Positions 392 through 16,400 of a DNA stretch of 34,607 bases are shown piece after piece (the first letter of the stretch is position 1; every line of letters begins with the position of its first letter). This DNA comes from Klebsormidium nitens (lineage: Eukaryota; Plantae; Klebsormidiophyceae): positions 1 to 34,607 of the forward strand of contig DF237719.1 in assembly GCA_000708835.1 (NCBI GenBank), in the 5' to 3' direction. Under the pieces are notes generated by a model. The model did no database searches and was not told where the DNA came from. It saw nothing but the letters and a program-made list of their open reading frames with translations. The translations under genes and the position numbers were made by a program.

Positions 392-3300
392 ATGGTACGG
401 CAGCTCGCTTCCCTTTTATTTCAACTGAATGCTGCTGTTGATGTGCTGCCGGGCATAGGCGATGATGAGCCTTCGAGCACTGTGCCCGTCACTTCTGAGG
501 TTCCTTATTGTTGTTTGCAGTGTCCTGAGCCATAAAAGCTTTTGTGCGGTGTATTCTTTATGTGTTGCCAAACAACGATTGCAATTGAATCGGCGTGTTG
601 TGCTTGTGCGAAGGACGAAGCTTGAAGCTTATGTTGTTCTGCAGGCTGCGTTAACTTCATGTTGCAAATTGCTCAGAAGAATTGAGGATTGATTTGCTTG
701 TTTCTCTGCAGGCAACTCTTGCTGATTCCTTCCTGGCGGATCTGGAAGACCTGTCCGACAATGAAGAAGGGTCTGAGGTAAGCACACTTTTTTGGTTTCC
801 GTGAAACATTCTCTTTGAGCCCCAAACACAAGGCTTTGACATTGCTGATTAGCCCATCTGTTCCGCAAGGTTGTGCTCGCCCCTCCAAATCTCGGTAGGA
901 TTGAGCAAAGAAACTTCAAACATGTTCTGTGATGCCTCATCATACTTGGCAAAAGCAGCAAGCATTAAGCACAGGTCTGTAAGTGGTGGTACCACGGTTT
1001 GTGCTCGGGAATGTGCTTGAGAGGTTGAATGCGCTCATCTTGATCTCTGCATTGCTGCCATCAATTGAGGATCATCGTCAATTCGTCAATTCGTTGTGCA
1101 GGAAGAATTGGAGGTCCCAGGGGATGCTATGGAGGAGGACCACGGCGAGGAAGAGAAGGACCTCGAGGCAGTCAATCCTGATGACCTGGACTCAATTGCA
1201 AAGCTGCAGAAGGGGGAAAGATACAACCGGGTCCTGAGGGTAAGCACTGAAGGCCCCCTGTTCATCAGCTGCGGGCGCAGGCTGGAATATTGTTTGAAGC
1301 TCTTCTCTCTTTTTCTAGCCATGCTAGTATGATCAGGAGGTTGGAACACCAGCAACCACCAGCGACTTTTGGTGTCACCTTCATTCCTGCATCACCTGTC
1401 TCAAAACATTGACAAGCAGCATTCTGTGACATGCTGGTTCATGTGCCGCCACCCCGTGCAGAAGACTGCTTCAATCTCGCTTTGCATGGCAACCTTGACA
1501 ATTCCATCCACAGCATCGCATCATCTTTTGCTGAGTGTGCTCTGGTTCTGCAGGAGGTTGAGGCCGGCCTCGAGAAGGACGGGAGCAACATCGTGCGCGG
1601 GGTGGGGGTTGAGGACGACCCTGAGTACAAGCTGATAGTGGAGGGGAACCAGGTGATGGTGCAGATCGACAACGAGATTGGAGCCATTCACAACTTCATC
1701 CGGGACAAGTATCGCACCAAGCTGCCGGAGCTGGAGTCGCTCGTGCTGCACCCCATCGATTATGCCCGGGTGGTCAAAGCGATCGGGAACGAGATGGTGA
1801 GTAAAATTGAGCGTTTGGTTGTCCATGCCCCGATACTAAAAGATAGTGAGGCGGTTGAAGGGCATGAGTGAGGATTACACGATCCAACAGTGGTCTTACA
1901 AGTCTTGGCTGCGGTATCTTGTTTTATTCTGTTGGAAGCAGGATTGACTCGATTCATGTAGATTTGTTGACCAAGACTATACACCGGGGGAAGCTTTGAA
2001 GTCCGGTTGAGGTCTCCACTTGCTCCAGCTGACAATTCGTTCCAAAGGGATGTCGCTAATATTCCTCTTTTTCTGACCTGTGTCAGCCCGCTTCCTTTTG
2101 CAGGATTTGACCCTAGTCGACTTGGAGGGCCTACTCCCGTCTGCCACCATCATGGTGGTGTCAGTTACGGCTTCCACCACCAGCGGCAAACCGTTGACGG
2201 ACGAGGTCTACCAGAAGGTGATGGACGCATGCAACAGGATACTCGACCTGGATGCGGCCAAAAAGAAGGTGAGCAACATCAAGACATTGCGATGCGACCT
2301 TCTCTTGAGAATGAATCCTCTTTCTTCGACCGCCAATCTCGTGGTTGCACTCTTCCGTCCAACGAGCAGGCCATGTCTGATTCAATATTTTTGTGACTTC
2401 GACCACCAACAGGATAGCATGCGAAATTCGGCGCAGAATAGTGCTCAGTCGATCTTACGTATCTTCCGGCCCCAGAATCCAGGCCGAACCCTGAAACTGA
2501 TCGATTTGGACATCAATTACTTCTCTCTCTGTTCTTCTGTTTTCCGGCTCTTCCGAGGAACGCTCAGAGAGTCCTTCGCTCTTTTTGAAGAGTCTCTGAC
2601 CAACTCAAACCTGCTGTCGCAGATCCTCAAGTTCGTGGAGAGCCGCATGCTGTTCATTGCCCCCAACCTGTCCGCGATCGCGGGCAGCTCCATCGCGGCC
2701 CGGCTGATGGGCATGGCCGGGGGCCTCGGCGCGCTCGCCAAGATGCCGGCCTGCAACGTGCAACTCCTGGGGGCCAACCGGAAGAACCTCGCGGGCTTTT
2801 CGACTGCCACGCAGCTGCCGCACACGGGGCTCGTCTTCCACACGGAAATTGTGCAGCAGACGCCGCCCGCGCTGCGCATGAAGGCGGCGCGCCTCATCGC
2901 TGGTGGGTTGACTCGAACATCTCGTTTGTGCCCTTGGACCTCCACTCCGACTGCCGAATTGAGTGCTCTTGCGGGGTGCGGCTTTTGGTTGTTTGCACGA
3001 ACACTAACCTGGGAGGCTCGCAAAAAAAGCTGCCGTCCAATTCAGAAGTCTCCACTCGACCATCGCCGGTTGTATCTCGTATGCTGGATTCCTTCGGTCT
3101 TTCAGGTTCTGGTGGCTCCTGTACTTGTCCGTGTGGTTTGGTCGAGTAAGAGACAGTCTCTGCATGCGTACATCTTAGAGTGTTGGATATCTCTTTGCTG
3201 AATAGATGTACCTCGGGCTCAGGTAGTGTTGCAGCACCATAAAATCAAGTGGTAAGACGTCGGATTCAAGCGGTTGCCGTTTGCAGCTTGGCGTCGCTTT

Positions 3301-8684: not shown

Positions 8685-10033
8685 AAATGCATCCGGCAAG
8701 GATTCTGGGCGAGATCAGTTTGCGGGCTGCTGGAGAAGAGATCATCTCCTATGCACTTCCGGAGCAGCCTCTTTAATAAGGTTACGAAACCATACGGCTA
8801 TAAGCAAGGCCAACGTAGGGAGGTCTCAGAAAGACGATATGGTCAAAGATTGTAAAGAAGATGGCAAGCCTGTCAAACCCGGTCAGCTTCCGTTTAGACC
8901 GCATCTTGGAATATGCAGGGAGCATCTGCAGCCGCCATGTCAGACAAGTCATAAGGCTAGTTGTTGTGGTGTGGCACACAACAGCTGCAATTCATTGTTG
9001 ATCGTTCGCACGACTGTTTGTTGTAAGTTCGCGTTTGATTACGTGCCCTTTTCTTCCTTGACATTCCAGAATCGGGCGCCCCGTATGGCAAACCTTGCTC
9101 GAGCGTGCATTCAGATTATGTGCTGACGTTTTATGTATCATAGCCTATACCCGCGCTTCAAGATCTGGCACATGCGACGGCCGCTCGCCGGCTTCCAACC
9201 TATCCATATGCCCGGCCACCCACCCAGCTAGCTATAGATACGCAGGAGCCGCATGTGCCTATAGGCGATACACCTAGGCCGCGCCCGTCTGCTACTGCGC
9301 GCTGCCATATGCATGCATGGTTTGCAATCCATTTAATCTGCCTGCCGGTGAAAATCATCACCATGCAGTACTTCACATGATCCACTTATACAGACCAGGT
9401 GCATGAAAACCTTTAGTATAATGCATGTGCGATGTTTCCAATACTAACGAGTGGCAGATCGTTGGATCAGCACGATCTCACTATACTTGCGCGGTTTCCA
9501 AGATAGCGAGAATTATGTTTCCGTCCGAAGAATGCAACCGATCAGACGCTTGTTCCGTCTTCCAAGCTTAACATTAACCCTTTTCTTATCATATCTCAAG
9601 GCTCTTTGGCCGGGGCATCAGTGATCATATTCGCTGAAATTGCAAATCAGTGAACAATCATCATGCCATGAAGCAGACTGGACGCATATCGAATGGTCTG
9701 TACGTATTGCATTATGCATGACAGCAAGAATGATCGACTTCGCATGCGGTCTCTCACTGAAAGATATCATAGATTACTACAATAGTCCAGTTCAATGCGT
9801 TGTCGCCCTCGTCGTCCCTATGCAACATGCAGAGCAAAACTGTGTGTCAAGTAAGTACATGCAGTCCGGTCATATTTGCGCAGCTGGATGAGTGGCCCGC
9901 ACGTAACGGACCTTGTTGAAAGCCTCAGCATGCATGGGGCATACGATCCTCGCCAATGCAAAGACGCGTGCCATCGCGTCCTGAATAACGATCATGCATG
10001 CCAGTGAATGTCAGACCAACATATACGTCTACC

Positions 10034-12844
10034 CTAGGCGTTTGACATCCTTTGCTTGGCCTGCAGAAGCTTCTGGCAGGCCTTCTGCCACTTCCAAAGA
10101 GCCAGCCTCTGCCGCTCCTCTATCCGCCCCTCAACCGCGGCCTGCCTCCACGCTGCAAAGTACCCTGCCGCCGACCTCAGACTCCAGACCCGCATCGCAC
10201 GCTTCGCAAGGACGACGCGGCTCGTGCCAAGACCGTCCCGGCAGAACTCGTGCCACGATCGCCAAGCCCGGCTCTGCTCCGAGCTTCTCCACTGAGCAAC
10301 CGTCTGCCGCATCAGACGCCGGCTTTTCCCGTACTCATTACCTACCCGCAAAGCGAATCGGTATGCAGCCTCGACCTCTTCCAGCCGAACTAGAGTTGCG
10401 GCTTGTGAATTCCCCGCGCCCATGGGGCCTTCAACAGCAGACTTCCGGCACTGCCCAATCAACTCTTCTAGCGTGTTGATGCCAAGAGCGCCCAAGCATA
10501 CGTGCTCTTCCAACAGCGCTCGAGCGGGTGCTAATCTCGACTTTGGATGAAGACTCCACCACCGGTGCAGAATGACGAGAACCCCCACATCCACCGCACC
10601 GTCCGGGTCTACCGCCACTAGTCTATCTAACTCCGTCCGTTCCCTAACTAAACCCCGCAGATGGTCCAGCCGTTCCAGTAGCATCCCCAGAACGTTGCTC
10701 GCTAACCGCAGGTCTAGCTGCAAGAGAGTTAACAACACGCTTTCTAAGGAGGGGCAGGCGCTCTCGAGAAAACTCGAAACGGCGCCTTCCTCTCCGCAAC
10801 TCGACAACACTGTCAACCCTTCAACGACGAAGTCCGCCGTTTCCTTTGCTAGCCCCGAGCTTTTCTTTACGGAGGCCCAATCAGTACCACGGCTTGTAGC
10901 GTTCTTCAAAACTCGATCTTCTACGTGTCCTTCTCCGGCCTGCCCCGGCGTGGACAACAACGCACCATCTTCTCCGACTCTGAGCCGCTCGTCCAATGCT
11001 GGAAGTAGTGGGCCGACTTCATCGTTAGGGAAATTTCGACTGGAAACAAGCGCGCCTGCCACTGATCGCCAGAGCTCCCGAGCCGCCGGACTCTGACCCC
11101 CTCTTTCAAGCTCTTTCCCAACTGCAGCTGCGAGGCGTAACAGCGCTTCCTGTGACAGCTGGACCACTTCTAGGGCTCCCAGGTACGACCCAGCCTGAAG
11201 CGCCTCCGCGAGTTGCCGCCAATCCCACGCAGTGAAAGAGCCCGTGTAAGCCCACTCGAGCACGGCCCGAACCCCCGCTGCACTGCACTCCTCTCTTGAG
11301 ACGCACAGCTTAGTGGAGGGCCCCGAATGTACTCTACCATCCTCTACAAGGGGAATGGTCCGCTCGTCATCTTTCTGTGAGGCAAAGCGCACAGCGGCCG
11401 CGAAGTAGGGAACCCGTTGGCACACTATGCAGGCGTTTGCATATACCACTGCACTGCTGGCTCGATCAGAGCTCTGACTCCAACTTTTATGCTCTTCGCA
11501 ACCAGGGAGTTGCCGACTGCTTCCCAGGACTTCGATCACTATGTCACCGCCCTGCCTTCCTTGCAGATCCTCAAAGAGAGCGCCCAAGGACGTGGCGAGG
11601 AGCCCAAGGCCTGCCTGGCCTGAGGCGCTTCCTAGCGGGCCAATGGTTTGGGGGAAACTGTGGTTGATGGAGAATCTAGGCGAGGCTTGAAGGGGCGGGG
11701 CCTTGAGATCTTCAAGGGCTCGCTTCTCCTTCCATTGGCGAAGTAGGTTAGCTGCGGCTTCTCTCTGCTGCCTGCAGTTTCCAAACGGCCAGTCAGGGAC
11801 GAGGACTTCATACGTTATGCCCAATGACATGGCTATCGATGCAATCTGTTTGATACTCTTCCAGCGCCAAGGTCCTGAGTCAATGTAGCTCCTGCCTTGA
11901 GTTTCGTATTCTTCCCAAACTACATTGCAAGATGCTCATAGGCTGGTCTGGCCAAGACATCTCAGAGTCGTTTGAACCAGCCGGTTGGTATCAAGTGAGC
12001 AATCAAACTCTTAAGTCAGGAAGAGTCTGCACTGTACCTATGCTACAGAACAAATGCAATGCTGACCATCTCTGAGGGAAAGGGGGATCTTCCTGCCATA
12101 CCTGTAAACGGTCCAGCCACTAAGCGTTCTGCTGAGGATTCGGGCCCGCCACTGCCTCTGCGCCTGCAGCTCTGCTTGGCACTTTGCAAGCTGATGGTCT
12201 AGAAATGACCGCCTGGGAAGAAGAAAGTATAGAAATAATGCTGTGGCGCTTATAAGTGATGTGGGCGAAGTGGAGGTTTCTCTCTCTTGTAGAGCAAGCG
12301 CATCGGTCAGTTGGTCCCCAAAGAGGGGTCAGTCAAGGTTTGGCAGCCCCCCGGTTCAGTTAACATCGCCCCCAAACATGCTCTATAGCATTGTGAACTG
12401 GTCATCAAAGACGCTTGAAGGTGAGATGCTTGGGGCTTAAGAAAGTGCTCTTTTGGGGGTTTCAGTTCTTCTATCTTTCATAGAACGCGGCATGTGCGCG
12501 AAGTTGCTCAACAGTCTGCAAGAGCTAGCTAGCCTGGTGCAGTCCTTTCTTGGAAGTAAGATACTTTCTTTTACATTTTCAACGTTCCAGAAGTCCCTCT
12601 TTGAGATTGGAAGTAAAATACTTCTTTCACTTTTTCAAGGTTCCAGAAGTTCCTCTTTGACATTGTAAGTTCTCTTTGCTGTTTCCGCCCTTGGTTTGGA
12701 TGGTCTGCATACTTGATGGTTTGTGATGGCTTTTGACTTTCTTACTCACCATTGAATCCAGAAGACGGAGAGGGGGTTGCCGTGCATTCTCCATGCCCGC
12801 CATGCTTGTCGTACTGCTTCTTCAGAAGGAGGCTCCTCGTCCAT
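10034..12844 (-). CDS. BTB/POZ-domain protein with N- and C-terminal Sfi1-like Trp repeats, 3 exons, ~647 aa
   Basis: Exons are 12844-12750, 12212-12102 and 11771-10034, with GT-AG introns, both phase 2, for 1944 nt. The BTB core reads GDIVIEV...VVYANACIVCQRVPYFAAAVRF...AAGVRAVLEWAYTG...LAEALQAGSYLGALEVVQLSQEAL. The first ATG is uncertain, because an acceptor-like TTCCAG lies just upstream and a further 5' exon is possible. Confidence 0.8.
12550..12670. repeat. Imperfect ~57-bp tandem duplication in intron 1 of the BTB gene
   Basis: TTGGAAGTAAGATACTTTC...GTTCCAGAAGTCCCTCTTTGAGA (12550-12606) is followed by TTGGAAGTAAAATACTTC...GTTCCAGAAGTTCCTCTTTGACA (12607-12662) and a partial third copy, TTGTAAGT. 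Confidence 0.85.
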
Positions 12845-13057
12845 TCTGGAACATATGTCAAGCTAATACGCCAAGCGACCGCTCCCAGAACGTTTGGACA
12901 CACATACGGCGAATACTTCAGGATCAAGCAATGGGGGCTCTGCGGGCCTGTCCTTGGAGATTCACAGGTTTCCTAGATACCTAGGTACTCCGCTTCTGTC
13001 ATCGAGGAACCTGAACGCAATGCGGCCGGGCGCCAAAGCCAGGTTGCGGCAGGCTCA

Positions 13058-13119
13058 GGCCCAGCTGGAAGAAAGAGTCGGACAGCCCAGTGCGTTTGCA
13101 GACCAAGAAATTAGGGTTT
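13058..13119. promoter_or_regulatory. Telo-box plus two site II motifs in a putative bidirectional promoter
   Basis: TTAGGGTTT (AAACCCTAA on the - strand) at 13111-13119, GGCCCA at 13058-13063 and AGCCCA at 13084-13089 (TGGGCY on the - strand). These lie between the divergent start codons at 12844 and 13418. Confidence 0.4.
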
Positions 13120-13417
13120 AGAAAGACATGGGACAAGGTCAGGTTGCATCTCATCCGTCCATTGGAGAACGACTGGTTTCCGACGTACGCTTCGCATCCA
13201 CCTTGTGGGGCGATGGGCGTCCTCCGTTGACCAGCCCTAAAGCATTGCCCCAGCGCCATATGGGGCCTGAGAGAAACCATGGCTGCGGCAGCATTGTAAT
13301 TTGAGCTACACGAGTACATATCAGAGTTCCTCGCTTGATTTTGCTTGCTGAGGCGCTCTTTGCAGTAGTGATCCATTGCAGGCTACTGCATGGAACATTA
13401 TTGCTGGAGTCTACTCC

Positions 13418-16400
13418 ATGGCGGCTGCTTTGCACTTGGAGAGAGGCTGCTTGAAAGCCTGGGCTCATGCAGGGGCTCGAGAGGCTAGGATGAGTAGCAC
13501 GTTGTATGCTCGTCCTGCTGCATCAATCTGCAACAGGGCGTCAACGTCAGTCCTTGTGGAAAGATCTCCAGCAGCTTGCATGTCAACTGCCTCATTGGGA
13601 ATGATGCCCAGTACCCAAATACCAAGCGGAGAACGTAGTGATCCAAGAAGTATTGCAGCAGCTTGTGGGACATTGTTTTCTAGACTGACGCAGCCAAAGC
13701 TTTCTGCATTGAAGAGGGGTGAATTTGCACCACCACCTAGAAAACACCTCATAGGTCCTCCAGGAGCAGCATCAGTTGATACTCCTGTAGTCCTGCAAGA
13801 CTTTGCGAGCCAGCAGCTGCACAAAGGCATTCAAAGGAGATCTCTGACAGTCTGTGGTTCTGCACCAAACAATCAGGCAAGTGTGCCAGCTACCCGTCAG
13901 TTGTTTTTGATCACTGTGTTTGACTTTTCTTTTCTGCTTCAAACCTTTGATAAGTTTACTACATTGTACCAACTCAATGTTCACAGTCTCTCAGCATGTA
14001 AACCAAGGTTATTCAACTTCAAACTTCTAATGCAAAATTCATTCAACAGATAGCGGATGGATTCTTGACACCAGGGCCTGCACCAACTGAGAAAGGGTCA
14101 GATCTTATATTCATTGGCACGGGGACAAGTGAAGGCGTCCCACGAGTCAGCTGCCTGACGGACCCAGAGCGTCAATGCCAGGCAAGTCCCTCTTCGCGCT
14201 GCCGAGACTCTTAGTTGTTCAGTTGAGTCAGCTTCTCTGACCAACAGCAGCAACTCAGCTACACACTTGCCAGATGCGCAAGCTTACATTGCTTACATTA
14301 GAGATTATCCTCTGTTCGTAGTGTACTTGGAAAGCTGACGATGCAGACAGCGTCTCTGCAGATCTGTTCAGATGCGGCTCGGCCTGGGAGCAGAAACAGG
14401 AGGAGGAACACGAGCCTGATGATTCGTTATGAGCATCCCGATGGTCGGAGGAGGAACATTCTGATTGATGCGGGCAAGTATGAGCCAACACCCTGGAACA
14501 TTCTACCTATCCGACGCAGAGGGGAAATTGACAGAGACACAGCTTACTTTTGACTAGCAAGTCTGTGCTTCGAAGTTGGGGATCAGGTTTGTACTTGCAT
14601 AAGTGTTCCTGCTCAGACACCAAGTTTGGGAACTACAGCATAGAGCCTCTGCTTCAAAGGAGCACACTCAAAGGAGCAGGTTGTCTGCCCCTTCTTCTAG
14701 ATGGCAACATGAGAAAGTGTTTCTCTGATGTGAATGCTTTTGCATACTCTTACAAATTGCTTCTGCTTCTGGCCCAGGTTCTTCTACCATAGTGCCCTGC
14801 AATGGTTCCCGCAACTCGGGTAAGTGGAAGCCACCGAACCAGCAATGCCTAGCTTTTTGTGGGACATGTATAGTAGTACGTTAACGGGAGTACCAATGAA
14901 GGTTCCTTTAGACTAGTGAATAGCTGTTTCAGATTTTTGTCTATCCTGGATCGTTTAAAATCATCTCTGGCCTCAATTCTAAGCACATTTTAACACAAAA
15001 CTCCTCTTTGTCTCACAATCAACTGCCAAGATCCCTTTGTTCCCGTGACTACTTATCCAGAGGCACATTGTTGAAAGTTTGGCTTTGTCATCACATGAAA
15101 CATCGTTCCTGCTCCTATCGTACAGGATCAGACAACTAGACGCCCTTGTAATTACGCACAGCCACGCTGATGCAATAGGAGGTGAGCCGCACGCCCACAG
15201 AATCATCTCTGACCAGTCGTTCAGGAACTCAAAGATGGAGCGGTTCCCTCTTCTCGAATACCGACTGGGTTTCACATCATAGCAGGTGTAGATTGGACTT
15301 GAAAGTATTTGGTACCGCTTTTGTTTCAATGGAGGTCGATATGAACGGAAGCTTAAGTTTTGATGCCGACTGTTCAAAGAAGTGATTTGGTTACCACAGG
15401 CTCCCTCTGGCATGCTTGGAGGTTCGGACGCTAAGTTGTATTTAATCAGAGTTTCTTGCGAGCAGGGATCCAACTCGTCATGCTGTTGAGCAAAACCTTT
15501 CTTCTCCTTCTCCTAATGTTAACAAAGGTCCTCATCGATCTTTTCAGGACTCGACGACCTGCGAGACTGGACGAACAACATCCAAGACAAGGTTCCTATC
15601 TATGTAGCACCACGCGACCTCGAGGTGGGTCTCGAGGCATGGTGCTTGGAGCTGCTGACGCTCGTTACAACGAGCATATGCCTGTCTCCCTCACCAGTTC
15701 TCACTAACATATTTGGTTGGTTTTGACAGTCTGCTTATGGACGCAAGAGTGCAAACATCTGTTTTGAAAGGCTCGTGCTTTCTGGTCCTCCGAACATGCC
15801 GCTGCGATCTGTTGGCTCTGCCTTGAACCCAGGTGCGTCTGTAATCGCAGGCTTTCACCAAAACAAAATGCCCTCTAAGGTCTCACGGAGTCACCGGAGG
15901 ATGCTCGTCCACTCACTGCAAATCTGCTAAGCTTTTGCTCGTCAGCATCCTGAACAGTTTCGCAAGTTTCACCTTGACGCAGGTGATGGGCAGGACGCAC
16001 TACTATCTTGTGGACCCGAGCGTCATCACCAAGGGCACCGCCGTGTCTACGCTGGACTTCAAAATCATGCCTGAGACGCCCTTTTCGGTTCAAGGCCTAC
16101 AAGTAAGCGGGCAATTCTTACAGAGAGTACTCGACTGTTCATCCGGCTTCCGGACGGTCTCAAACCCAGCCTTTGTTAGACGATCATATTCCCTGTCTCG
16201 GCCTCAAGTTCTTTCGAACATTCTTCTCCGTGCAATACGAAGTCCGTGGTAAATCTGCTTCGCCTCTTGCAGGACAAGAAGATGCTCAACATTGTAAAGC
16301 CGAACCATGTTTCGCTTCCTCGCAGATAACTCCGCTACCCGTCTGGCATGGGAAAGGATACAAATCGCTTGGGTTTCGCTTTGGAAACATCTGCTACATA

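What the first reader, a model, noticed from the sequence alone, without database searches (positions are those of the whole stretch)
10034..12844. BTB/POZ protein sandwiched between Sfi1-like (centrin-binding-type) repeats
Seen: splicing two upstream exons that the ORF track misses gives the N-terminus AVRQAWRAWR..FWIQWRSFLDHQLAKCQAELQAQRQWRARILSRTLSGWTVYRQQREAAANLLRQWKE. AQRQWRARILSRTLSGW fits A-x7-LL-x3-[FL]-x2-W almost exactly (IL for LL), with 33 residues between the W of IQW and the W of SGW. The C-terminus has TVAQWRSSEQSRAWRSW and AMRVWSLRSAAGYFAAWR, 35 residues apart. A BTB domain and a helical BACK-like region lie between them. Known: that consensus defines Sfi1 repeats that bind centrin at centrioles and spindle pole bodies, and BTB proteins are Cullin-3 substrate adaptors. 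Inference: this may be a CUL3 adaptor tethered to centrin fibres or basal bodies of a flagellated alga. I do not know of this combination being described.
Basis: partly seen in the sequence, partly recalled or inferred. Interest (0 to 1): 0.75.

Follow-up and report, generated by a model that had tools for sequence, protein, structure and literature searches.

The report
BTB-BACK protein with twin tryptophan-rich ends
This is a real, expressed gene of the green alga Klebsormidium nitens for a BTB-BACK (ubiquitin-ligase-adaptor type) protein with two related, tryptophan-rich, basic helical modules at its ends; they look like centrin- or calmodulin-binding helices in motif only and fail the tests for true Sfi1 repeats.

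Summary
The gene is KFL_007700030 of Klebsormidium nitens (647 aa). The middle of the protein (residues 117-556) is a BTB-BACK fold (KLHL11, Z 11.0). The two ends are paralogous copies of one module of about 90 residues. Six conserved tryptophans align between the copies. The modules carry net charges of +8 and +16, against -14 for the core.

The Sfi1 reading is not established. Pfam Sfi1 and the PDB sequences give no match. The strict consensus occurs 0 times, and Kilmartin's scan criteria are not met. Each module holds at most about 2.5 periods, with conserved helix breakers. Only the core motif [FWL]xxW[KRH] is enriched: 3 per module against 0.25 expected.

Relatives are four unnamed proteins of 44-66% identity. 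An exhaustive profile search of 1.84 billion proteins found nothing else, so the gene does not track flagellated lineages.

I could not test centrin, calmodulin or CUL3 binding. My best reading is a lineage-restricted BTB-BACK adaptor whose partner-binding modules are new, and whose partner is perhaps an EF-hand protein.

The parts
9936..13074 (-). Transcript of KFL_007700030, approximate ends. The 5'UTR is about 230 nt and the 3'UTR about 40-100 nt.
   Evidence: Transcript contigs of runs X1, X3, X6 and X7.
12750..12844 (-). Coding exon 1 (residues 1-31 and two bases of W32). Start codon at 12844-12842.
   Evidence: Conserved with the ATG in L001-L003.
12213..12749 (-). Intron 1 (537 nt, GT..AG). 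Low-depth contigs at 12322-12636 suggest some unspliced RNA.
   Evidence: The joint 12211->12749 is present in all four runs.
12102..12212 (-). Coding exon 2 (111 nt, residues 32-69).
11772..12101 (-). Intron 2 (330 nt, GT..AG).
   Evidence: The joint 11770->12101 is present in all four runs.
10034..11771 (-). Coding exon 3 (residues 69-647 plus the stop at 10036-10034).
11702..12823 (-). N-terminal W module, residues 8-92; the coordinates include both introns. Predicted helices are 8-20 and 24-92. Conserved W at 15, 18, 29, 32, 53, 65 and 82. Net charge +8.
11129..11629 (-). BTB/POZ domain, residues about 117-283, with two poorly conserved, low-confidence loop insertions (about 150-178 and 206-222).
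   Evidence: Pfam BTB scores 15-19 bits in P0001 and 22.7 bits (above the cut-off) in orthologue P0005. BTB-only structures align at Z 6.2-6.8 over 117-283.
10343..11128 (-). Helical 3-box/BACK-like region, residues about 284-545, with a disordered insertion at about 310-374.
   Evidence: KLHL11 BTB-BACK 3i3n_A: Z 11.0, rmsd 4.0, 227 residues, model range 117-556.
10037..10333 (-). C-terminal W module, residues 549-647. Predicted helices are 549-580 and 585-646, separated by the conserved DGLG. Conserved W at 563, 572, 575, 598, 610, 628 and 630. Net charge +16. It is a paralogue of the N module.

Best explanation
KFL_007700030 encodes a BTB-BACK protein found only in Klebsormidium and a few unnamed relatives.

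Shown:
- It is a spliced, expressed, three-exon gene.
- It has an acidic BTB-BACK core of the kind that forms CUL3 substrate adaptors.
- It has no Kelch, MATH or other known substrate-binding domain.
- Two paralogous, strongly basic, Trp-rich helical modules of about 90 residues flank the core, each with six aligned conserved tryptophans.

Inferred:
- The BTB domain dimerises and probably recruits CUL3 (about 55% likely).
- The W modules are the partner-binding parts.
- The partner is most likely an acidic EF-hand protein (calmodulin, a calmodulin-like protein or centrin) that wraps around basic helices anchored by tryptophans. That would make the adaptor calcium-responsive or tether it. I put any EF-hand partner at about 35-40%. 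Sfi1-type centrin binding is the special case within that, at about 15%.

The modules are not members of the Sfi1 family by any test available here. The confidence given below is for the architecture together with the partner-binding role of the W modules; the EF-hand partner is the weaker part, at the odds stated above.
For: Gene and expression.

Core fold: the top fold matches are all BTB or BTB-BACK CUL3 adaptors. KLHL11 scores Z 11.0 over 117-556, NPR1 9.3, KBTBD2 8.9 and SPOP 8.8. An orthologue passes the Pfam BTB cut-off.

Module duplication: the N and C modules align at 25-27% identity with six Trp columns in register, and with the same spacings (14, 21, 12, 17 against 12, 23, 12, 18).

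Conservation: all module tryptophans are kept across relatives of 44-66% identity, except W598, which is G in one relative.

Features typical of EF-hand targets (established knowledge of calmodulin-binding helices):
- net charge +8 and +16 against -14 for the core;
- Trp pairs 12-14 residues apart, recurring every 33-35 residues;
- 9 of the 14 module tryptophans are followed by K or R;
- invariant residues lie all round the helix, not on one stripe (resultant 0.03-0.12);
- the modules are predicted as long helices, and the C-module model gives no sign of a compact domain (pTM 0.32); contacts could not be inspected.

Against: No binding was tested.

The BTB loop that carries the CUL3-contacting phi-x-E motif in known adaptors is here a variable insertion with no conserved motif.

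Several stretches of the modules are almost invariant residue by residue, for example RQQRxAAANxLRQWKxKRALE and LALWKWQKACQKLL. That is more than usual for calmodulin sites and would also fit a specific protein partner or self-packing.

No IQ, Sfi1 or other EF-hand-target family matched.

The structure models rest on only 5-11 sequences and are of low confidence in the modules (pLDDT 31-81).
Confidence: 0.45

Rival explanations
1. The modules are true Sfi1-type centrin-binding repeats: one centrin binds per 33-35 residues (W32 and W65; W575 and W610). They tether a CUL3 adaptor to centrin fibres, centrioles or basal bodies.
For: The core motif [FWL]xxW[KRH] occurs 6 times, 3 per module against 0.25 expected. 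Residues 49-65 fit A-x7-IL-x3-L-x2-W. The reverse hydrophobic triad (positions -7, -3, 0) is complete at W18, W32, W65 and W563 (read from the sequence). Alternate tryptophans are 33-35 residues apart, the repeat length favoured outside fungi (PMC2063913). Klebsormidium has centriole proteins that are expressed (bioRxiv 10.1101/2021.07.25.453666).
Against: Pfam Sfi1 gives no match at E up to 10 for any of six modules, and no Sfi1 chain in the PDB matches. The strict consensus occurs 0 times. Kilmartin's two scan patterns give 1 hit each where 3 and 2 are required (PMC2173958). There are at most about 2.5 periods per module, against 20-24 continuous repeats. Conserved P24 and DGLG break the helices. 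Neighbouring tryptophans 12-14 residues apart leave no room for the 25-33 residues that one centrin covers. The Atlas link to an Sfi1-bearing cluster scores 0.75, below chance level. The gene is expressed in vegetative cultures and has no orthologues in other flagellate lineages.
Confidence: 0.15
2. The modules bind no EF-hand protein. They are self-associating or substrate-binding helical hairpins: the N and C copies pack on each other, on the second protomer of the BTB dimer, or on a specific protein substrate, with the tryptophans buried in the interface.
For: The C-module model looks like a generic helical hairpin or spectrin-like arrangement (Z up to 8.3). Near-invariant stretches that include many polar residues suggest a specific interface. 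Invariant hydrophobic residues all round the helix also fit a multi-helix bundle. The duplication of one module at both ends invites pairing.
Against: The structure models give no sign of a compact module: the C-module model has pTM 0.32, and module pLDDT is 31-81. The N x C complex test gave no verdict, which is not evidence either way. Charges of +8 and +16 on the two modules would repel each other unless an acidic partner neutralises them.
Confidence: 0.3
3. The basic Trp/Arg-rich amphipathic helices bind nucleic acid or membranes, so the protein is a BTB scaffold on chromatin, RNA or an organelle surface.
For: The positive charge is very high (22 K+R against 6 D+E in the C module). Trp and Arg together are typical of interfacial membrane binding and of arginine-rich RNA-binding helices (general knowledge).
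Against: No known nucleic-acid-binding or lipid-binding family matched. Conserved residues are not confined to one amphipathic face. No direct evidence.
Confidence: 0.1

Closest known systems
Sfi1 and Sfi1-repeat proteins (yeast Sfi1p, human SFI1, ciliate Sfi1 family): centrin-binding repeats A-x7-LL-x3-F/L-x2-W-K/R
   Same: Helical, proline-poor, basic segments with the recurring motif [F/W/L]-x-x-W-[K/R]. Alternate tryptophans lie 33-35 residues apart. One segment (49-65) fits a relaxed consensus.
   Different: No profile match and no strict consensus. Two short modules of at most about 2.5 periods, not 20 or more continuous repeats. Two tryptophans per period, 12-14 residues apart. Conserved helix breakers. 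The modules are attached to a BTB-BACK core. Centrin binding is untested.
KLHL/KBTBD-type BTB-BACK CUL3 substrate adaptors (closest solved: human KLHL11 BTB-BACK, 3i3n / 4ap2)
   Same: BTB fold followed by a helical 3-box/BACK region: Z 11.0, rmsd 4.0 A, 227 of 262 residues aligned.
   Different: Sequence identity is only about 11%, and Pfam BACK does not match. Long disordered insertions lie in the BTB and BACK regions. There is no Kelch propeller; a W-rich helical module takes its place and a second copy sits in front of the BTB domain. The phi-x-E loop is not conserved.
Plant BT proteins (BTB - TAZ zinc finger - C-terminal calmodulin-binding domain), CUL3 adaptors regulated by calmodulin-like proteins
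   Same: A streptophyte BTB protein with a basic helical C-terminal tail that could bind an EF-hand protein. This gives a precedent for calcium-sensor input into a BTB adaptor (PMC8774732, PMC11101318).
   Different: No TAZ domain. There are two long duplicated modules, not one short calmodulin-binding site. No detectable sequence relationship. Calmodulin binding is untested here.
Canonical calmodulin-binding helices (1-14 / 1-10 class, e.g. the smooth-muscle MLCK peptide)
   Same: Basic amphipathic helix with bulky Trp anchors about 12-14 residues apart.
   Different: The anchors here recur in a conserved array of six per module, and the surrounding residues are unusually conserved. The resemblance is by motif only and rests on general knowledge, not on a test.

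Membership tests
Sfi1 / Sfi1-repeat centrin-binding proteins | Match to the family profile (Pfam PF08457 Sfi1) | tested here: not met
   No hit at E up to 10 for P0001, its N or C segment, or any of six modules. HMMER's filters drop most matches above E of about 0.1.
Sfi1 / Sfi1-repeat centrin-binding proteins | Repeat consensus A-x7-LL-x3-[F/L]-x2-W-[K/R] (PMC2173958) | tested here: not met
   The strict pattern occurs 0 times. The relaxed pattern (any of LIVM at the LL positions, no K/R required) occurs once, at residues 49-65.
Sfi1 / Sfi1-repeat centrin-binding proteins | Kilmartin's operational scans: at least 3 hits of A-x12-[FL]-x2-W-[KRH], or 2 hits of [FWL]xxW[KRH]-x21-34-[FWL]xxW[KRH] | tested here: not met
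   1 hit (594-611) and 1 hit (572-611) respectively.
Sfi1 / Sfi1-repeat centrin-binding proteins | Long array (20-24 or more) of continuous 23-36-residue repeats on one uninterrupted helix (PMC2063913) | tested here: not met
   There are two modules of about 85-100 residues. Trp spacings are 12-23 residues. Conserved P24 and DGLG 581-584 break the predicted helices.
Sfi1 / Sfi1-repeat centrin-binding proteins | Core motif [F/W/L]-x-x-W-[K/R/H] recurring in a helical, proline-poor region | tested here: met
   6 hits, 3 per module, against 0.25 per module in shuffles (p about 0.001). One Pro in the N module and none in the C module.
Sfi1 / Sfi1-repeat centrin-binding proteins | Binds centrin 1:1 per repeat | not testable with these tools
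   No centrin sequence was available by reference for a complex prediction. This needs pull-down, ITC or AF-Multimer with K. nitens centrin.
BTB/POZ domain proteins | Pfam PF00651 at or above the gathering score, and the BTB fold | tested here: met
   P0001 scores 15-19 bits, below the 20.5 cut-off. Orthologue P0005 scores 22.7 bits over profile positions 20-106. BTB structures align at Z 6.2-8.8 over residues 117-283 and beyond.
BTB-BACK CUL3 substrate adaptors (KLHL/KBTBD/SPOP type) | BTB followed by a 3-box/BACK helical domain | tested here: met
   KLHL11 BTB-BACK: Z 11.0, rmsd 4.0, 227 residues over 117-556. KBTBD2 8.9, SPOP 8.8, NPR1 9.3. By fold only; Pfam BACK does not match.
BTB-BACK CUL3 substrate adaptors (KLHL/KBTBD/SPOP type) | Conserved phi-x-E CUL3-contact motif in the loop after the third BTB helix | tested here: inconclusive
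   That loop is a 24-residue insertion that varies among the five relatives. An LVE occurs in K. nitens only. No residue-level structural alignment was available.
BTB-BACK CUL3 substrate adaptors (KLHL/KBTBD/SPOP type) | Binds the N-terminal domain of CUL3 | not testable with these tools
   No CUL3 sequence was available by reference.
Plant BT (BTB-TAZ-CaMBD) proteins | TAZ zinc finger between the BTB domain and the C-terminal calmodulin-binding domain | tested here: not met
   No TAZ hit in Pfam for P0001, P0003 or P0005 at E up to 10.

The most novel reading that the evidence does not exclude
The twin W modules are a new kind of short array of EF-hand-protein docking sites, with two Trp anchors per 33-35-residue period, related in principle to Sfi1 repeats. 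They load centrin onto both ends of a dimeric BTB-BACK CUL3 adaptor. That would link calcium and centrin structures at the centrioles of a streptophyte alga directly to ubiquitylation.
Probability: 0.15. Interest if true: 0.7.

Novelty: new variant of a known kind. Interest (0 to 1): 0.4.

Why it matters
BTB-BACK adaptors usually recognise substrates through Kelch, MATH or similar domains. This one has a duplicated, Trp-rich, basic helical module that matches no described family and sits on both sides of the core.

If the modules bind calmodulin-like proteins or centrin, this would be a second, independent way, beside the plant BT proteins, of wiring calcium sensors into a CUL3-type ligase. 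It would occur in a lineage close to the origin of land plants.

If they do not, the gene is still a clean example of a lineage-restricted new domain, with a simple test set of six conserved tryptophans per module.

It is not evidence for a conserved basal-body component. The gene is confined to Klebsormidium and a few close, unnamed relatives.

Tried and rejected
- Complex prediction of the N module (1-95) with the C module (548-647): no verdict, score 0.00, controls not run. This is not evidence for or against binding.
- Foldseek of the whole model against the PDB: nothing at E <= 0.001. Only the VIA-align second look resolved the BTB-BACK fold.
- Fold search of the C module alone: only generic hairpins and coiled coils, Z <= 8.3, which is within noise for helical models.
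- ESM Atlas for the C and N modules: best scores 0.78 and 0.86, to an eIF3m helix. A cluster in which 12% of members carry Pfam Sfi1 scored 0.75, below the level that shuffled proteins reach.
- Profile of the six modules against the PDB sequences: only chance-level hits to ASXL1 and TBP, E 0.35-0.85.
- Exhaustive profile search: only the family itself. The profile began at residue 69, so exons 1-2 were not covered. The N module was searched separately by word search and found the family only.
- Findings search for Sfi1 or centrin in this genome: no note.
- A one-faced coiled-coil reading of the N helix: the tryptophans cluster weakly on one face (resultant 0.65, p 0.10), but the invariant residues do not (0.12).
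No partner sequence existed by reference, and I did not type any from memory.
The window's own three exons were joined only inside a local script, to compare them with P0001.
Full report
**What is there.** The window is a whole 34,607-base scaffold of Klebsormidium nitens. The 598-codon minus-strand ORF at 10034-11830 is the last exon of the annotated gene KFL_007700030. Its public product, P0001, has 647 residues and is named only 'hypothetical protein / BTB domain-containing protein'. The minus-strand CDS is 12844-12750, 12212-12102 and 11771-10034. Translated locally, it equals P0001 exactly.

**Is the splicing real?** Eighteen public runs from at least six studies hold 60-77% of the sampled words of the stretch, about the exonic share. 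I laid transcript contigs of four runs from four studies on 9300-14800.
- All four carry both joints: 11770->12101 (skips 330) and 12211->12749 (skips 537). Both read CT..AC on the plus strand, which is GT..AG on the gene's strand.
- No letters differ from the window, and the transcript spans about 9936-13074.
- The runs are only guessed to be RNA, but contigs that lack both introns cannot come from this genomic DNA.
- Weak contigs inside intron 1 (depth 2-4 against 36-57) suggest a little unspliced RNA.
- The frame upstream of the ATG at 12844 has stops.

**Relatives.** A word-indexed search of 5.8 billion proteins found four relatives of 44-66% identity. All are unnamed and come from a Logan run, a JGI metagenome and an ENA assembly.
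- An exhaustive profile search of 1.84 billion cluster representatives found only this family. That profile began at residue 69.
- The N-terminal 95 residues, searched separately, also found only the family.
- The public gene calls of the relatives lack the N-terminus, or read through the intron, as in P0003. In their DNA, exon 1, exon 2 and the start of exon 3 are all present.
- The ATG, both intron positions and both intron phases are the same in those loci. The head-to-head neighbour gene is conserved in L002.
- The gene is therefore single-copy and lineage-restricted. It is not shared with Chlamydomonas, Chara, bryophytes or other flagellate lineages at detectable similarity.

**The core.**
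- Pfam reports only BTB. P0001 scores below the cut-off (15-19 bits against 20.5), and orthologue P0005 scores above it (22.7 bits, profile positions 20-106).
- An AlphaFold2 model built from an 11-row alignment has mean pLDDT 58. It is confident at about residues 230-300 and 375-515.
- Foldseek found nothing significant. VIA-align on its candidates gave these matches:

| Structure | Z | Detail |
|---|---|---|
| KLHL11 BTB-BACK | 11.0 | rmsd 4.0 A, 227 of 262 residues, model 117-556 |
| NPR1 | 9.3 | |
| KBTBD2 | 8.9 | |
| SPOP | 8.8 | |
| BTB-only domains | 6.2-6.8 | over 117-283 |

- Unrelated helical designs appear only from Z 7.5 downward.
- The core is thus a BTB domain followed by a 3-box/BACK-like helical domain, with long, poorly conserved, low-confidence insertions (142-225, 310-374).
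- The loop that carries the CUL3-contacting phi-x-E motif in known adaptors is a variable insertion here. CUL3 binding is therefore inferred from the architecture and is not shown.

**The ends.** The two termini are 7-8% tryptophan against 1.7% in the core.
- They are copies of one module. tblastn aligned the N module to a relative's C module at 27% identity over 89 residues (E 0.015).
- MAFFT puts six Trp columns in register: W18/563, W29/572, W32/575, W53/598, W65/610 and W82/628.
- The spacings match: 14, 21, 12, 17 in the N module and 12, 23, 12, 18 in the C module.
- All these tryptophans are conserved in the relatives, except one W598-to-G change.
- The modules carry +8 and +16 net charge, against -14 for the core.
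- AlphaFold predicts helix 8-20, a break at the conserved HGNP, then one helix 24-92 (pLDDT 63-81). It predicts the C module as helix 549-580, a break at the conserved DGLG, then helix 585-646.
- Invariant residues lie all round these helices (resultant 0.03-0.12), not on one stripe.

**Are they Sfi1 repeats?**

In favour:
- [FWL]xxW[KRH] occurs six times, three per module, against 0.25 per module in shuffles (p about 0.001).
- Residues 49-65 fit the consensus with IL for LL and T for K/R.
- Alternate tryptophans are 33-35 residues apart, the length favoured outside fungi (PMC2063913).

Against:
- Pfam Sfi1 gives no match for any of six modules at E up to 10.
- A profile of the modules finds no Sfi1 chain among the PDB sequences.
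- The strict consensus occurs 0 times. Kilmartin's two scan patterns give one hit each where three and two are required (PMC2173958).
- Sfi1 proteins have 20-24 continuous repeats on one helix, and one centrin covers 25-33 residues (PMC2063913). Here a module holds at most about 2.5 periods, neighbouring tryptophans are 12-14 residues apart, and conserved breakers interrupt the helices.
- The ESM Atlas gave only sub-chance leads. The C-module model resembles only generic hairpins and coiled coils.

Family membership is therefore not met. A motif-level resemblance remains.

**Mechanism.** The shown facts are the architecture, the expression and the conservation. I infer that the protein is a dimeric BTB-BACK scaffold, probably a CUL3 adaptor, in which the W modules take the place of a substrate- or partner-binding domain.

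The modules have four properties typical of targets that EF-hand proteins wrap around (general knowledge of calmodulin-binding helices):
- basic charge;
- Trp anchor pairs 12-14 residues apart;
- conservation all round the helix;
- prediction as long helices with no sign of a compact domain (C-module model pTM 0.32; contacts could not be inspected).

Plant BT proteins give a precedent for a BTB adaptor with a calmodulin-binding tail (PMC8774732, PMC11101318). I put an EF-hand partner of any kind at about 35-40%, Sfi1-like centrin binding at about 15%, self-packing or a specific non-EF-hand protein partner at about 30%, and nucleic acid or membrane binding at about 10%.

A complex prediction of the N module with the C module gave no verdict. 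Docking with centrin, calmodulin or CUL3 was impossible because no partner sequence was available by reference.

**Context for the basal-body idea.** The sequenced strain is reported not to form flagellated cells in the laboratory, although centriole genes such as BLD10 are expressed (bioRxiv 10.1101/2021.07.25.453666). This gene is present in ordinary culture transcriptomes. That fits a vegetative role at least as well as a role in zoospores.

**Novelty.** The gene model and its 'BTB domain-containing' label are already public. The duplicated W module and its placement on both sides of a BTB-BACK core are not described in the literature I could search: no paper links BTB with Sfi1 in this sense, and the modules match no Pfam family. 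I rate it a new variant of a known kind, of moderate interest.

- The orthologues' exons were used as separate rows by reference.
- The window's exons were joined only in a local script, to check identity with P0001.

Noticed in passing
window 13282-14800 (+ strand): A spliced neighbour gene lies head to head with the BTB gene. Its exons are about 13311-13873, 14047-14178, 14359-14477 and 14778 onward. The two 5' ends are only about 210-240 bases apart, so the promoter region is probably shared. One run's contig (X3) merges both transcripts. The first exon has no Pfam match. It is conserved in the same position in L002 (66% identity).
   Followed up: partly
window 2080-3198 (+ strand): An ORF with a strong Nop domain (PF01798, E 3.8e-43), most likely an exon of a NOP56/NOP58-type snoRNP protein gene.
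   Followed up: no
window 12322-12636 (inside intron 1 of the BTB gene): Short, low-depth contigs (depth 2-4 against 36-57 for the mRNA) occur in all four runs. They may be unspliced pre-mRNA, retained intron or a small separate transcript. The strand is unknown.
   Followed up: no
L001 4001-4081 (protein P0003, residues 1-27): The public gene calls of the relatives (P0002-P0005) miss exons 1 and 2. P0003 starts inside the intron and reads through the acceptor site. Database proteins of this family therefore lack the N-terminal W module, which hides the two-ended architecture.
   Followed up: yes
I did not examine it.
   Followed up: no
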